A stretch of 49,654 nt of DNA from contig NC_068981.1 in assembly GCF_001194135.2 (NCBI RefSeq), positions 198,081,981 to 198,131,634 on the forward strand, read 5' to 3'. Made by a program: the position numbers and the translations under genes. Of the stretch, positions 16,170 through 20,878 are shown piece by piece (within the stretch, counting starts at the first letter, position 1; each line of letters starts with the position of its first letter). This DNA is from Octopus bimaculoides (taxonomy: Eukaryota). The notes beneath the pieces were generated by a model. It was not told the DNA's origin. It saw only the letters and a program-made list of their open reading frames with translations, and made no database searches.

Positions 16170-16269
16170 CTGAGACTCTCCTGCATTATTTTCTTCAATC
16201 TCTTTCTCTTCTTCTGTTTCAATTCCAGAACAAACATTGATCAGTTGGTCAATGCATTCTGTGACAAAT
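16170..16269 (-). CDS. Exon j: end of the talin bundle (R)FVTECIDQLINVC, then SGIETEEEKEIEENNAGESQ
   Basis: Acceptor gttgttgttacag, donor CAG|GTGAGT, 100 nt, phase 2-0. Matches talin AVTDSINQLITMC. It is not in the ORF track. Confidence 0.9.
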
Positions 16270-16964
16270 CTGTAACAACAACAACAACAACAAACTGCAA
16301 ATACTATCTACAATTACACATACATCACACTATGTACATCATCATCATCGTTTAACGTCCGTTTTCCATGCTGGCATGGGTTGGACAGTTCGACTGGGGT
16401 CTGGGAAGCCAGGAGGCTACACCAGACTCCACTCTGATCTGGCAGAGTTTCTACAGCTGGATATCCTTCCTAACGTCAACCACTCCGAGAGTGTAGTGGG
16501 TGCTTTTTACGTGCCACCGGCACAGAATCCAGTCAAAGTGGCACTGGTATCAGCCATGTTCAGATGGTGCTTTTTACATGCTCACAACTACAATATATAT
16601 AATATGTATACGTGCATGTGTATATATCATCATCGTTTAACGTCCACTTTCCATGCTGGCATAGGTCGGACAGTTTGACTGAAGGGTGGCGAGCTGGAAG
16701 GCTGGACCAGGCTCCAATCCGATCTGGCAAAGTTTCTACAGCTGGATACCCTTCCTACTGCCAACCACTCCGAGAGTGAAGTGGGTGCTTTTCACATTCC
16801 ACCGGCACAAGGGCCAGTCAGCCAACACTGGCATCGACCATGCTTGAATGGTCTTTTTTTATGTGCCACTGGAATGGGACCAGTCAGGCAGCACTGATAT
16901 CAACTACGCTTGAATGATGCCTTTTACTTGCCACTGGCACGAGTGCCAATCAAGTGGTACTGTC

Positions 16965-16997
<33 letters not shown>

Positions 16998-17489
16998 TAC
17001 ACATACACAGTGAATAGATTGTCTAAATTATGCAAAAATGAAAATAATACTGACATCTCATTTTCATCACATTAATTTCAATAGCAAGCTGGTTCTATTG
17101 ATTGCATCAGCTGGGACCCTTATCATCATAACCGACATCCGCCTTCCATGCTAGCATGGGTAAATAATATTGTTTCATAAGTAAAGAATGGTTTAATAAG
17201 CAATGATGTCTGGAAGTTATCTCATTGTTTAGAGTTCCTGGATTAAATAACAGCAGGAGTTGCATGGCTCCACTGTATCATGTACAAATGTATGCTTTTG
17301 GCATGGCTTCTACAGTTGGATGCGCCTCCTAACAGCAACCATTTGAGAGAGGGGACTGAATGCTTTTCTTTATGTCACACCTCAGTGGTTTTGGGACACT
17401 TAAAACAGTTCAAGTGTATCAACTGAATTGCTCATGTGTGTGTAAATTATTACAGGCAATAAAATTAAATTGATTTTATTAGGTTTAGA

Positions 17490-18985
17490 GAAAATGCATC
17501 AACAATCTAATCAGGTATATTTATGATACTTGATGTAGAGAAATCCTTTGATAGAGTAACCCTCTGTGTGATATGATGGGCTCTGAGGAGGTTAGGGGTA
17601 GATGAATGGGTGGTGAATGCTGTACAGGCCATATACAAAGATGAGATGAGGTGAGGTGAGAGTTAACCACAAGTATGGCAAAGAATTTGGTGTACAGGCA
17701 GGAGTTCATCAAGGCTCACACGTCAGTCCCGTCCTTTCCATCTTTGTCCTCCAGGCCATAACAGGGGAATTCAAGACTGGCAGACCCCGAGAACTACTAT
17801 GCTGATGATCTTGCCCTCATAGCAGATTCCATATCATCCTAGTAAGCAAGAAAATGGACAGGACTCTACTCCCCGCTTAGGTAGGTGGCCCTGTTCAATT
17901 TGTAGGAAAGGTGTAGGCAGGAACTCCATACTGTGCACCCAGTGTAAGCTATGGACAAACACAAGGGGTAGTGGAATAATAGGAAGGTTATCTGAGAATG
18001 CAGTGTTCATATGTGGATGCACAGGATCCATAAAAACTATTGAGACTTGGGAAATTGATTCTCTCAGATGACCTAGTAGCTCATTAGAGGTAGTAGATAA
18101 TTTCTGCTACCTCAGGGACCAAATTAGTAGTGGGGGAGGATGTATGGAGAGTGTAACAGCTAGAATAAGAATAGCATGGAAGAAATTCAGAGAGCTTTTA
18201 CCTCTGTTGGCCCCAAAAGGTTTCTCTTTCTGAGTGAAAGGAAGATTGTATGATGCATGTATGTGGACAGCAATTCTACATGGTAGTGAGAGATGTGGGC
18301 CTTGAATGCAGAGGGCATGTGAACATCAGAAAGGAGTGAAGCTAGTACGTTCTACTGTATGTGTAATGTAAGTTTACATGTTCAACAGAGTGCTAGTATA
18401 TTGAGAGCAAAGTTAGGCATAAGAGGAATTGGTTGTTGTGAGCAAGAGAGAAACCTGTGCTGGTTTGATAATGTGACGCGGATGGAGGCCGACAGCTCTA
18501 TAAAAAAGCACTGATCTCTCAAAAAAGATGGAACACGTGGAAGCAGGAGACTCAGGAAGACACGGGACCAAGTACTGAAGGACAACCTCAGGATGCTGAG
18601 CCTTTTGGGTGAAATGACAAAGGACCGAGTTACCTGGTACCTTGCTGTGCTCAAGAAGACTAATATTTCACAGCTGAAGTGTTAAGACTGGTTCCCCTGG
18701 GGAAGAGGATTAGCCTGCAAGAGTCCTGTGCTAATGGTATGCAAAAGCACCTGTGCAATGCCACATAAAAACACTCATGTGACACCATGTAAAAGCACTT
18801 GTGCCAGTGCCACATAGAAAGCACCCAGCACACTTTGTAAAGCGGTTGGTGCTAGGAAGAGCATCCAGCTGTGGAAACCAGGCCAAATCAGGCTGGAGCC
18901 TGGAGCAGCTCACCTGCTTGCCAGCTCTGGTCAAGCATGCAACTCATGCCAGCAAGGACAATGGACATTGAATGATGATGATGAG
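17490..18985 (+). mobile_element. 5'-truncated, degraded RTE LINE (RT, PHD insert, C-terminus, UTR, tail)
   Basis: GVHQGS, LLYADDLALIA, GRWPCSICRKGVGRNSILCTQCKLW and AWKKFRELLPLL motifs with multiple stops. Confidence 0.85.
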
Positions 18986-19418
18986 TGTAAGCTTAAGAGA
19001 AGAGGGACAGAGAGAGAGAGGTGTTAGTATGAAATATAATAATTATTGATATTTTGGCACGTTAAAAGTACCATCCAAACGTGGATGGTGCCAGTACCCA
19101 CTGACTGGCCCCTGTGCTGGTGGCACGTAAAAACCACCATCTGAATGTGGTTGATGCCAATACCCACTCACTAGCCCCCGTCCTGGTGGCATGTAAAAAG
19201 CACTATCCAAATGTGATTGATGACAGGCTTCTGTGCCTGTGGCATGGAAAAAGCACCCACTATACTCTCAGAGTGGTTGGCATTAGGAAGGGCATCCAGC
19301 TGTAGAAACATTGCCACAACAGATTGGAGCTTGGTACAGCCACTGGCTCTCCAGACCTCAGTCAAAACGCCCAACCCATGCCAGCATGGAAAACAAATGT
19401 TAAACGATAATGATGATG

Positions 19419-20281
19419 AGGGTGCCTAAAAAATTTGACATCATTTGAGATGTCCATATTGGAGTGACTACATGGTCAAGAGAAATGAAAGTCGATAGGC
19501 TTAATTTTGAACATAACAAGTCTTATTCTAGAGATTTCCAACGAAAAATTCTGTGAGATGATTATTTATAAGGTGGGGCAGAACACCCTAATTCAATTTT
19601 GGCGAGTCCCTTCCATGTTCAATTGTGTCATTTGGATTTTCTTTGCCCCCAAATGCAAACATTTTGCTTGTTCATTTTGCCATTCATATGTTCTGTAGCT
19701 TTGTCACTGAAAACAAGATGGTTTTCAAAGTCGTCATCTTAAAATTTCTCTTTCATATCTTCACAGAATGTTTTACACTTTTGCTTTTCAACCAGCTTTA
19801 AAGTCTGCACAAGCTGAAGCTAGTAGGGGGTCAGCTGCAAGGATTTTCTTATGACATGCCAAACAATGGACTAGAAGAGCCGGGTTTCCAGACTTGCTCT
19901 TCGCACAGATTCCTTTGGACTCCGACTAAATGTTTCCCAAAGTTGGTTGACCATCTCTTCTGAAACTGTCGGCCGTCCAGATCCTTTTTTCCAACACAAA
20001 CAACCTTCTTCTTGAAAGTTCTTGTGCCACATCTAAATATACTTCCCTCTTGATATTTGTTTATGAAATCTAATAAATACATGTTGCACATTCACATTTG
20101 ACTGAGTTTGGGCATACTTCAATACACAAAATGCCTTTTCTCTTGCAGTAAACGGCATGTCTAATCTTGAAAAGAAAAACCTATGAAAGATCATATTTTA
20201 AAAATGGATTGAATTCTAGACATACTGCTAAAATTTGAGACAATTTGGACGAAATGATGTCAAATTTTGGGGGACACCCTG
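19419..20281 (-). mobile_element. Internally deleted Tc1/mariner transposon
   Basis: Terminal inverted repeats (c)agggtg.c...aaaatttgacatcattt at both ends, with TA after the right end. Transposase remnant DDDFENHLVFSDKATEHMNGKMNKQNVCIWG / ENPNDTIEHGRDSPKLN. Confidence 0.85.
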
Positions 20282-20561
20282 TATATAGGCACAGTATGAG
20301 CAATGCTGATTAGATCAACCCTAGTTTATAACTGGTACTTATTTTATTGACCCTGACAGGATGAAAAGTAAAGTTGAACTTGGTGGAAACAGAATGCAGA
20401 ACATAAAGACATGATATGCCACTAAGCTTTTTGGCCCCGAGCGCTTAACGATTCTGCCAGCTCACTGCTTGGATTATTGTCACGTGATTGTTTAACATGT
20501 GACACATAACGAATTCCACCAAAAGAACAAAATTAATGGTAAAACCAAACTGAATTCCTAC

Positions 20562-20878
20562 CTTGCTGCACCTGAGAGTTTGTTCTTTGCACTGTGGTCA
20601 GTTTGGTCAGTGGAGACAGCATTGGCAACCAGAAGCAAACGACTTGAGACATCAGAGATGCTGTCAAGTTTCTCCATAATTTGTGTCTTGGCAGTTAGGT
20701 CGGGTGTCATATCAGCAACAAGTCCTACGCTGCTAACAAATTCTTCATAAGCATTCTTGTACAAACCTGACGATTCAATAAGGTAATCAGACGGTTGGCT
20801 GGAACAAGCAATAATTTTACTTGCTGCCATATCCAAGTTCTTTGCTGCGGAGCTCATCCGTCTTAAGGATGACGTTCG
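20562..20878 (-). CDS. Exon i: talin-rod R6-like helices RTSSLRRMSSAAKNLDMAASKII...ISDVSSRLLLVANAVSTDQTDHSAKNKLSGAA(R)
   Basis: Acceptor tttttagtatttgcag, donor GCAAG|GTAGGA, 317 nt, phase 0-2. Aligns without gaps to recalled talin-1 AAAGLNQAATELVQAS...ISMSSSKLLLAAKALSTDPAAPNLKSQLAAAAR. Confidence 0.9.

What the first reader, a model, noticed from the sequence alone, without database searches (positions are those of the whole stretch)
16230..20578. The captured segment ends in a vinculin-binding-site-like helix
Seen: the spliced sequence LSGAARFVTECIDQLINVC fits the consensus LxxAAxxVAxxVxxLIxxA with the same substitutions as talin LAAAARAVTDSINQLITMC. Known (recalled): the last helix of R6 (helix 27) is one of the cryptic, force-exposed vinculin-binding sites of talin. 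Inference: the hydrophobic face is conserved while the loops have drifted, suggesting selection for the fold or for vinculin binding in the new host.
Basis: partly seen in the sequence, partly recalled or inferred. Interest (0 to 1): 0.72.

Follow-up and report, generated by a model that had tools for sequence, protein, structure and literature searches.

The report
Talin vinculin-site helix copied into octopus gene
An octopus ankyrin-repeat/coiled-coil gene carries two exons copied from the talin gene that encode four of the five helices of talin rod domain R6, and the last helix is a well-kept copy of talin's vinculin-binding helix 27; at least the larger exon is strongly conserved, but binding to vinculin itself is untested.

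Summary
On the minus strand, exon A (20887-20562) and exon B (16269-16170) splice to give LSGAARFVTECIDQLINVC. This peptide is in the annotated Octopus bimaculoides protein LOC106881714 (A0A0L8FR86 and isoforms).

The segment is homologous to talin R6 (PDB 2L10, E 1.8e-14). The 19-mer aligns with helix 27, the single vinculin-binding site (VBS) of R6. All 9 consensus positions are identical to mouse talin; only 2 of the other 10 are.

New here:
- The two exons keep the phases, near-identical lengths and the intron inside helix 27 of invertebrate talin genes. That points to a phase 0-0 cassette moved by exon shuffling, not a retrocopy.
- Helix 1 of R6 lies on the preceding talin exon and was not copied, so the module is a four-helix "R6 minus helix 1".
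- Exon A is under very strong purifying selection between two octopods (1 nonsynonymous and 20 synonymous changes, omega 0.012).

Selection is real, but the conserved face is also the bundle core, so fold and vinculin binding cannot be separated. Published work on R10 suggests that losing helix 1 makes a VBS more accessible. Vinculin binding is plausible (about 0.4) but unproven. Interest is moderate.

The parts
20562..20887 (-). Exon A of the talin-derived cassette. It is 326 nt, phase 0 to phase 2, with an alternative acceptor giving a start at 20878. It encodes YLQRTSSLRRMSS...NKLSGAA plus the first two bases of the Arg codon. This corresponds to talin R6 helices 2-4 (talin H24-H26) and the first third of helix 5 (H27).
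   Evidence: Splice sites are read directly. Homology to talin R6. Same phases as talin exon L007 5959-6296, which is 338 nt. Against a second octopod: 21 nt differences, 1 nonsynonymous, omega 0.012.
16270..20561 (-). Intron splitting the Arg codon inside the helix-27 homologue (phase 2). It sits at the same position and phase as the intron of invertebrate talin genes. It is filled with SINE-like copies and decayed retroelement fragments.
   Evidence: GT at 20561-20560 and AG at 16271-16270. Talin loci L002 (CG|gtcagt) and L007 (AG|gtaagt) have the intron at the same codon. Many talin genomic ORF fragments end at ..AAR followed by unrelated sequence. Repeats.
16170..16269 (-). Exon B of the cassette. 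It is 100 nt, phase 2 to phase 0. It encodes the third base of Arg, then FVTECIDQLINVC (the rest of the VBS-like helix), then SGIETEEEKEIEENNAGESQ, a drifted acidic remnant of talin's R6-R7 linker.
   Evidence: The equivalent talin exon L007 9224-9317 is 94 nt, has the same phases and also ends CAG|gt.
16230..20578 (-). The 19-residue VBS-consensus window LSGAARFVTECIDQLINVC, read across the intron. Coding bases are 20578-20562 and 16269-16230.
22928..23269 (-). Upstream host exon (residues about 561-674 of XP_014787678.1, ...KVDQEE). It ends in phase 0, has no similarity to talin, and carries two acidic Trp motifs.
   Evidence: tblastn of P0039 on the window. No Pfam hit. tblastn of talins finds nothing here.
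12507..12632 (-). Downstream host exon, alternative (126 nt, phase 0-0, VNEGF...EEEDSV). It is present in 2 of the 4 isoform models.
6614..6955 (-). Next constitutive host exon (EPFSEDKV...QGK). It starts in phase 0 and is not talin-like.

Best explanation
The region encodes the last helix of a four-helix protein module derived from talin rod domain R6.

Shown:
- Two complete talin exons sit in a phase-0 intron of an octopus gene for an ankyrin-repeat plus coiled-coil protein (LOC106881714). They cover helices 2-5 of R6, and the talin intron inside helix 27 is still in place. This is exon shuffling at the DNA level.
- The exon holding R6 helix 1 was not copied.
- The final helix is the homologue of talin helix 27, the one VBS of R6. 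It keeps every consensus position and the Arg at position 6.
- Exon A is under very strong purifying selection.
- With a talin-family alignment, the module is predicted to fold like R6 helices 2-5.

Inferred:
- The module works as a protein-docking unit in which this helix can insert into the vinculin head D1 groove, as talin's helix 27 does.
- Without the stabilising helix 1, the bundle should open more easily than R6. The site would then be reachable with little or no pulling force and could tie vinculin (and so actin) to whatever the ankyrin/coiled-coil scaffold binds.

My confidence that this is a talin-R6-derived, selected four-helix module with an inherited VBS-type helix is about 0.9. 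My confidence that vinculin is the working partner is about 0.4. The overall figure given for this explanation refers to the full statement, including vinculin.
For: - Homology: PDB phmmer to talin R6, E 1.8e-14. Pfam Talin_IBS2B scores 27.5 bits against a cut-off of 27. The 20 hits whose sequence or Pfam profile I read, of 37 in 1.84 billion representatives, are talins or talin fragments.
- Gene context: the UniProt/RefSeq models contain the spliced peptide. The window is GCA_001194135.2 CM046601.1.
- Exon shuffling: same intron position and phase as talin loci L002 and L007. Exon lengths are 326 vs 338 nt and 100 vs 94 nt. Flanking host introns are phase 0. No other talin-like sequence lies in the 91.7-kb locus.
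- Helix 1 absent: in talin it lies on the previous exon (L007 5190-5321). The 780 bp upstream of exon A in the second octopod hold no such ORF.
- Selection: exon A has 1 nonsynonymous and 20 synonymous differences, dS 0.33, omega 0.012, p 3e-12. Exon 1 of the same gene has omega 0.13. Flanking intron is 15% diverged.
- Fold: AlphaFold2 with alignment gives pLDDT above 94 over the module and four helices. The best PDB match is 2L10 talin R6, rmsd 0.9 A over 119 columns.
- VBS: consensus fit and face-specific identity. Helix 27 is the VBS of R6. In R10 the four-helix form melts at 58 C against 74 C and binds vinculin Vd1 at room temperature.
Against: - No binding data exist, and no octopus vinculin sequence was examined.
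- The conserved face is also the bundle core, so its conservation is expected from folding alone.
- The near-absence of amino-acid change over all of exon A, surface included, argues that the folded bundle surface matters. That fits docking of another partner at least as well.
- Non-consensus changes include Ala to Phe at position 7 and Ala to Gly at position 3. Bulkier side chains lowered affinity in the RIAM helix (PMC3605642).
- Exon B was not compared across species.
- The single-sequence AlphaFold2 model gave the same helices but no compact R6-like packing, so the fold rests on the talin alignment.
- No transcript evidence could be retrieved here.
Confidence: 0.4

Rival explanations
1. 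FAT-like docking bundle. The module works in its folded state as a four-helix bundle that binds an amphipathic (LD-type) helix of another protein, or of the host protein itself. Binding would use the groove between its second and third helices, which R6 helix 1 covers in talin. The VBS consensus is kept only because those residues build the core.
For: - Foldseek matches to LD-motif-binding four-helix bundles are nearly as good as the matches to other talin domains. These include p130Cas with paxillin LD1 (5W93, TMt 0.82), FAK and Pyk2 FAT domains (0.71-0.78), the TLNRD1 4-helix bundle (0.79) and talin R7R8 with an LD peptide.
[quoted passage not shown] That groove is uncovered here.
- Only 1 amino-acid change in 108 codons implies that surface residues are constrained too.
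Against: - No partner motif was identified.
- Talin positions in the third helix that are small or hydrophobic (GG, M) are E, K and D here. That would make the uncovered face polar rather than a hydrophobic groove. I could not map these positions on coordinates.
- The structural similarity among up-down four-helix bundles is generic.
Confidence: 0.3
2. Structural or self-association module only. The bundle serves as a rigid spacer or an oligomerisation element between the acidic disordered region and the C-terminal coiled coil. It has no vinculin contact and no specific helix-docking function.
For: - The host protein is otherwise ankyrin repeats, long disordered acidic stretches and a coiled coil. 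A small folded unit could simply organise these.
- Every conservation feature seen is compatible with folding constraints alone.
Against: - An omega of 0.012, ten times lower than in the exon 1 of the same gene, which encodes the N-terminus and the first ankyrin repeat, is unusually strict for a mere spacer.
- After capture the sequence diverged to 35-46% identity from talin exons that are a median 73% identical to each other. It then became frozen, which suggests a newly acquired specific role.
Confidence: 0.2
3. Annotation artefact. The two talin-like exons are not part of the ankyrin gene's mRNA. They would be a gene-model artefact or a separate tiny transcript nested in an intron.
For:
- The protein models are computational.
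- An assembly gap of 987 N lies 100 bp upstream of exon A.
Against: - The exons are on the same strand as the host gene. They form a phase 0-0 cassette between phase-0 host introns.
- The canonical splice sites are conserved in a second species.
- Strong purifying selection shows that exon A is translated.
- No other talin-like exons lie nearby that could make an independent gene.
- All four isoform models include both exons.
Confidence: 0.05

Closest known systems
Talin rod domain R6, helix 27 (the single cryptic vinculin-binding site of R6; PDB 2L10)
   Same: Direct homologue. Identity is 33% over 115 residues to mouse talin-1. All nine VBS consensus positions and Arg6 are identical. The predicted fold superimposes at 0.9 A. 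The gene keeps the same intron inside the helix.
   Different: It is not part of a talin: there is no FERM head, no other rod domains and no I/LWEQ domain. It lacks R6 helix 1, so it is a four-helix rather than a five-helix bundle. The H26-H27 loop and most surface positions differ. It is embedded in an ankyrin/coiled-coil protein.
Talin R10 four-helix construct 1843-1973 (PDB 2B0H) compared with the five-helix domain 1815-1973 (PDB 2KVP)
   Same: A talin five-helix bundle with its N-terminal helix removed still folds as a four-helix bundle. It is less stable (58 C against 74 C) and exposes its VBS to vinculin Vd1 at room temperature (PMC2887493). The octopus module is the natural equivalent for R6. 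2B0H is the second-best structural match.
   Different: That construct is a laboratory truncation of R10. This one is a genomic truncation of R6 fixed in a different gene. Its stability and vinculin binding have not been measured.
[quoted passage not shown]
   Same: A non-talin protein built from a talin-rod-like helical bundle unit.
   Different: TLNRD1 resembles R7R8, not R6. It is a whole small protein conserved in vertebrates (bioRxiv 10.1101/2020.05.19.103606, abstract). The octopus case is a two-exon insert in a larger unrelated protein.
Bacterial VBS mimics (Chlamydia TarP; also IpaA and Sca4)
   Same: A single amphipathic helix that fits LxxAAxxVAxxVxxLIxxA, sits outside talin and can engage vinculin D1 (PMC6001692).
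   Different: Those helices are convergent mimics in disordered effector regions and are constitutively exposed. This helix was inherited from talin and is packed in a bundle.

Membership tests
Talin rod R6-type helical bundle (Pfam Talin_IBS2B PF21896; PDB 2L10) | Significant sequence similarity to talin R6 | tested here: met
   phmmer against PDB gives E 1.8e-14, with R6 as the best of all talin rod domains. Pfam scores 27.5 bits against a cut-off of 27 for the exon peptide, but only 20.4 bits in the full-length protein, so it is borderline for Pfam.
Talin rod R6-type helical bundle (Pfam Talin_IBS2B PF21896; PDB 2L10) | Five-helix topology with the extra N-terminal helix that is unique to talin | tested here: not met
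   The alignment starts at residue 41 of 2L10. Helix 1 lies on the preceding talin exon. No such exon is in the locus or in the 780 bp upstream in the second species. The model has four helices.
Talin rod R6-type helical bundle (Pfam Talin_IBS2B PF21896; PDB 2L10) | Gene structure shared with talin genes (intron position and phase) | tested here: met
   The intron splits the Arg codon of ..AAR in the window, in L002 and in L007. Exon phases are 0-2 and 2-0 in both genes.
Talin (the protein family) | FERM head, 13 rod bundles and a C-terminal I/LWEQ actin-binding domain | tested here: not met
   The host protein has ankyrin repeats, disordered regions and a coiled coil. Its only talin-like part is residues 684-798.
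Vinculin-binding site (VBS) helices | Amphipathic helix fitting LxxAAxxVAxxVxxLIxxA | tested here: met
   6 exact and 3 conservative matches out of 9. It is the only such window in the protein, and 9 of 2000 shuffles give any. The region is predicted helical in both models.
Vinculin-binding site (VBS) helices | Homology to an experimentally mapped VBS | tested here: met
   It aligns with talin helix 27, which is named as the VBS of R6 in bioRxiv 10.1101/2021.04.26.441533.
Vinculin-binding site (VBS) helices | Binds the vinculin head D1 domain by helix insertion | not testable with these tools
   No octopus vinculin sequence was available, and the structure tool models single chains only.
FAT-like LD-motif-binding four-helix bundles | Up-down four-helix bundle fold | tested here: inconclusive
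   Met in the alignment-based model (TMt 0.71-0.82 to FAT and p130Cas domains). Not reproduced in tertiary packing by the single-sequence model.
FAT-like LD-motif-binding four-helix bundles | A hydrophobic, basic-flanked groove that accepts an LD-type helix | not tested
   Model coordinates could not be inspected and no partner motif was identified.
ANKRD26-like ankyrin plus coiled-coil proteins (host gene; resemblance recalled only) | N-terminal ankyrin block of that subfamily and a CCDC144C-type coiled coil | tested here: inconclusive
   Ankyrin repeats were found. The full-length Pfam scan (E <= 0.01) listed only ankyrin families and Talin_IBS2B, and returned no family for the C-terminal coiled coil. 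PDB hits are generic ankyrins.

The most novel reading that the evidence does not exclude
Octopods have evolved a new vinculin adaptor by exon shuffling. It would be a 'de-caged' talin R6 module with helix 1 lost and the VBS accessible without integrin-borne force. Placed in an ankyrin/coiled-coil scaffold, it would recruit vinculin and actin to a site unrelated to focal adhesions. It would be a natural counterpart of the laboratory four-helix talin constructs.
Probability: 0.25. Interest if true: 0.65.

Novelty: new variant of a known kind. Interest (0 to 1): 0.5.

Why it matters
Talin's vinculin-binding helices are the standard example of force-gated binding sites. Outside talin they are known mainly from alpha-actinin and alpha-catenin relatives and from bacterial mimics.

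Here an animal genome has cut out exactly the exon pair that encodes a talin bundle without its stabilising first helix, pasted it in frame into an unrelated scaffold gene, and then conserved it tightly. The case has two uses:
- It is a clean, datable example of exon shuffling with the donor intron still in place.
- It is a natural test of the idea that four-helix versions of talin bundles expose their VBS.

If vinculin is the partner, it would reveal a cephalopod-specific route for attaching vinculin and actin to a new scaffold. If not, it shows that a VBS-consensus helix can persist purely as bundle core. That would be a caution against predicting vinculin binding from the motif alone.

Tried and rejected
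- A word-indexed protein search with the 139-aa spliced peptide returned nothing, not even the window's own protein. I therefore treat that tool's negatives as weak.
- An exact look-up of the exon A ORF as it stands in the window found no record.
- The profile-free search of 1.84 billion representatives returned 37 hits. The 20 I read as sequence or by Pfam are talins or talin fragments, and none is a closer non-talin relative. It also failed to return the window's own protein, so it cannot exclude close orthologues hidden in clusters.
- Six short ORFs overlapping exon B were looked up to find exon B in the second octopod. None is on record, so exon B conservation stays untested.
- The species behind runs SRR11869384/90/91 could not be identified from the literature.
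- No Octopus talin came back from the third protein search. The one named hit was an oyster talin-2-like protein. The capture therefore could not be dated against the species' own talin.
- tblastn of six talins against the 91.7-kb locus found no further talin remnants. This rejects the idea of a larger decayed talin copy.
- Pfam on the other host exons and on intronic ORFs gave nothing useful except a PHD-like finger.
- A PDB search with the ankyrin block gave only generic ankyrin hits.
- The single-sequence AlphaFold2 model gave the same helices but no R6-like packing.
- A retrocopy origin is rejected because the intron is retained. Convergent evolution of the motif is rejected because homology extends over all four helices.
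Full report
**1. What is in the sequence**

The window is Octopus bimaculoides chromosome sequence (GCA_001194135.2, CM046601.1). It matches locus L003 at 100% identity, including the same N gaps.

Two minus-strand exons are bounded by canonical splice sites:
- Exon A runs 20887-20562. An alternative acceptor gives a start at 20878. The donor is GT at 20561-20560.
- Exon B runs 16269-16170. The acceptor is AG at 16271-16270 and the donor is GT at 16169-16168.

Exon A ends with the first two bases (AG) of an Arg codon, and exon B supplies the third base (A). 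The spliced product therefore reads ...NKLSGAA-R-FVTECIDQLINVC-SGIETEEEKEIEENNAGESQ.

The same peptide occurs in four protein models of one gene, LOC106881714 (XP_014787678.1; UniProt A0A0L8FR86, FRY1, FR83, FR48; 1084-1131 aa). The protein has:
- N-terminal ankyrin repeats;
- a long acidic, probably disordered, middle;
- the talin-like segment (residues 684-798 of the 1090-aa form);
- a C-terminal coiled-coil-like region.

**2. What the segment is**

- phmmer against all PDB chains gives talin-1 as the only significant family. The best match is the isolated R6 domain (2L10, E 1.8e-14), covering chain residues 41-155, which are residues 1240-1355 of full-length talin.
- Pfam gives Talin_IBS2B just above its cut-off (27.5 against 27 bits).
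- A HMMER scan of 1.84 billion cluster representatives returned 37 hits. The 20 whose sequence or Pfam profile I read are talins or talin fragments, at 25-43% identity.
- AlphaFold2 with a talin-family alignment predicts four long helices with pLDDT above 94.
- The best structural match in the PDB is again 2L10 (rmsd 0.9 A over 119 columns). Next come the four-helix VBS3 fragment of talin (2B0H) and talin R10 (2KVP).
- A single-sequence model reproduces the four helices but not the compact packing. The tertiary fold therefore rests on the alignment-based model.

**3. How it got there**

Genomic ORF fragments of invertebrate talin genes often stop being talin-like immediately after ...QAAR. Two talin loci were read at the DNA level.
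- In L002 the exon ends GCC CG|gtcagt.
- In L007 it ends GCC AG|gtaagt, and the next exon begins A|GGA GTA ACT.

This is the same codon and the same phase as in the window.

| Feature | Talin gene L007 | Window |
|---|---|---|
| First exon | 5959-6296, 338 nt, phase 0 to 2 | Exon A, 326 nt, phase 0 to 2 |
| Second exon | 9224-9317, 94 nt, phase 2 to 0, ends CAG\|gt | Exon B, 100 nt, phase 2 to 0, ends CAG\|gt |

Further points:
- The last 20 codons of exon B (SGIETEEEKEIEENNAGESQ) are a drifted, acidic remnant of talin's R6-R7 linker. A few residues still line up (K, E, N, A, terminal Q).
- The host exons on either side end and begin in phase 0.
- tblastn of six talins against the whole 91.7-kb locus finds only these two exons.

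The simplest reading is exon shuffling. A two-exon, phase 0-0 cassette was copied as DNA, intron included, from a talin gene into a phase-0 intron of the ankyrin/coiled-coil gene. A retrocopy is excluded by the retained intron.

**4. What was left behind**

In L007 the first helix of R6 (talin H23) is encoded with the end of R5 on the preceding exon (5190-5321). No counterpart exists in the octopus locus. In the second octopod, the 780 bp upstream of exon A cover most of the span hidden by the window's 987-N gap, and they hold no counterpart either. The module is therefore R6 helices 2-5 only.

**5. Is it maintained?**

A Logan contig from sequencing run SRR11869384 (L001) carries the orthologous exon A of a related octopod of unknown species.
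- Flanking intron differs at 23 of 154 positions. Exon A differs at 21 of 326, and only one difference changes an amino acid (Ser to Gly).
- Nei-Gojobori estimates for exon A are dS 0.33, dN 0.004 and omega 0.012. The chance of at most one nonsynonymous change among 21 under neutrality is 3e-12.
- Exon 1 of the same gene in the same pair gives omega 0.13.
- Both splice sites of exon A are conserved.
- Over the exon A region the module is only 35-46% identical to talin exons that are a median 73% identical to each other.

The module therefore diverged strongly from talin and is now tightly constrained. Exon B could not be recovered from the second species.

**6. The helix itself**

The published consensus for vinculin-binding sites is LxxAAxxVAxxVxxLIxxA (Gingras et al. 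2005, as quoted in PMC6001692). R6 contains a single cryptic VBS, helix 27 (bioRxiv 10.1101/2021.04.26.441533).
- The octopus 19-mer matches 6 consensus positions exactly and 3 conservatively (T9, I12, C19). These are the same three departures as mouse talin helix 27.
- It is the only window of the 1090-aa protein that satisfies all nine positions. Only 9 of 2000 shuffles of the protein produce any such window.
- Against mouse helix 27, all 9 consensus positions but only 2 of the other 10 are identical (Fisher p 6e-4). Against the invertebrate talin L007 the figures are 9/9 and 3/10.
- Arg at position 6 is kept. By my numbering of the TarP peptide, this corresponds to the residue that hydrogen-bonds vinculin. 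The codon is also the split AG|A codon, so splice-site constraint may contribute to its conservation.
- New features are Phe at position 7 and Gly at position 3, both off the consensus face.

**7. What this does and does not show**

The claim of a conserved hydrophobic face with drifted loops is borne out: the DPNAPN loop of talins is DQTDHS here. But the face that contacts vinculin is the same face that forms the bundle core, so the pattern follows from fold conservation alone. The 'same substitutions as talin' are inherited. Selection is demonstrated for exon A, which holds helices 1-3 and only the first six residues of the motif.

**8. Most likely mechanism**

For talin R10, the five-helix domain melts at 74 C and needs 37 C to bind vinculin Vd1. 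The same domain without helix 1 is a folded four-helix bundle that melts at 58 C and binds Vd1 at room temperature. The authors generalise that VBSs in four-helix bundles are constitutively active (PMC2887493). The octopus module is the natural R6 equivalent of that truncation.

My best reading is a folded docking module whose last helix can be given up to the vinculin head more easily than in talin. That would link vinculin and actin to the ankyrin/coiled-coil scaffold. I put this at about 0.4.

Two observations favour a rival, at about 0.3, in which the folded bundle binds another helix, for example in the groove uncovered by the loss of helix 1:
- the near-complete freeze of all residues of exon A;
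- the good structural matches to LD-motif-binding FAT-type bundles.

A purely structural role (0.2) and an annotation artefact (0.05) are less likely.

**9. Novelty and score**

I found no description of this protein or of a talin R6 module outside talin in the searchable literature. The kind is known:
- talin-type helical bundles with a VBS;
- TLNRD1 as a precedent for talin rod units outside talin.

This case is a new variant: a different domain, truncated to four helices, placed in a new host protein, with a clear exon-shuffling origin. Interest is moderate (0.5), because the anatomy and the selection are solid but the functional claim in the finding is untested.

Noticed in passing
window 44471-44593, about 29680-29853, 22928-23269 (minus strand exons): The host protein's disordered middle carries four acidic tryptophan motifs (SDCWGDD, GSDWDSV, NDWDSS, DSDWDSP). 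They look like short linear binding motifs, and two of them lie in the exon just upstream of the talin-derived cassette.
   Followed up: no
window about 20848-20878 (minus strand, start of exon A): The captured module begins RTSSLRRMSS where talins have a different sequence. This is a basic-x-Ser pattern that looks like a protein-kinase site at the start of the first helix. It is identical in the second octopod.
   Followed up: partly
window 16270-20561: The intron inside the helix is crowded with interspersed repeats. SINE-like copies lie at 16341-16535 and 16626-16820 (direct), with inverted partners at 19213-19418; a separate 69-nt direct repeat pairs 18841-18909 with 19272-19340. There are also decayed retroelement fragments. 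The equivalent talin intron in L007 is about 2.9 kb.
   Followed up: partly
window 17823-18068 (+), 28601-28906 (-), 43011-43517 (+): Similar-looking Cys-rich zinc-finger ORFs recur in three introns of the gene. Pfam gave PHD at E 1e-5 for the longest copy, only a weak C1-domain hit (below cut-off) for the second, and nothing for the third. They probably come from one decayed retroelement family; I did not align the three copies and only noted the fragments.
   Followed up: partly
window 12507-12632 (minus strand): An alternative 126-nt phase 0-0 exon (VNEGF...EEEDSV) lies directly after the cassette. It is present in two of the four isoform models.
   Followed up: partly
window 20986-21972: An assembly gap of 987 N starts about 100 bp upstream of exon A, and the chromosome-level assembly has the same gap. 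The second octopod's contig (L001) covers 780 bp upstream of exon A and shows no exon there.
   Followed up: yes
talin fragments P0070, P0072, P0073, P0075, P0077 (alignment A1): In some talin genes the genomic ORF reads straight through ..AAR and breaks after ..SLIG instead. The intron inside helix 27 is therefore lineage-restricted, and the octopus cassette descends from a talin gene of the AAR-intron type.
   Followed up: partly
search results: Neither the word-indexed search with the module peptide nor the representative-library search returned the window's own annotated protein, although a longer query did. Negative results from these tools about close orthologues are therefore weak.
   Followed up: partly
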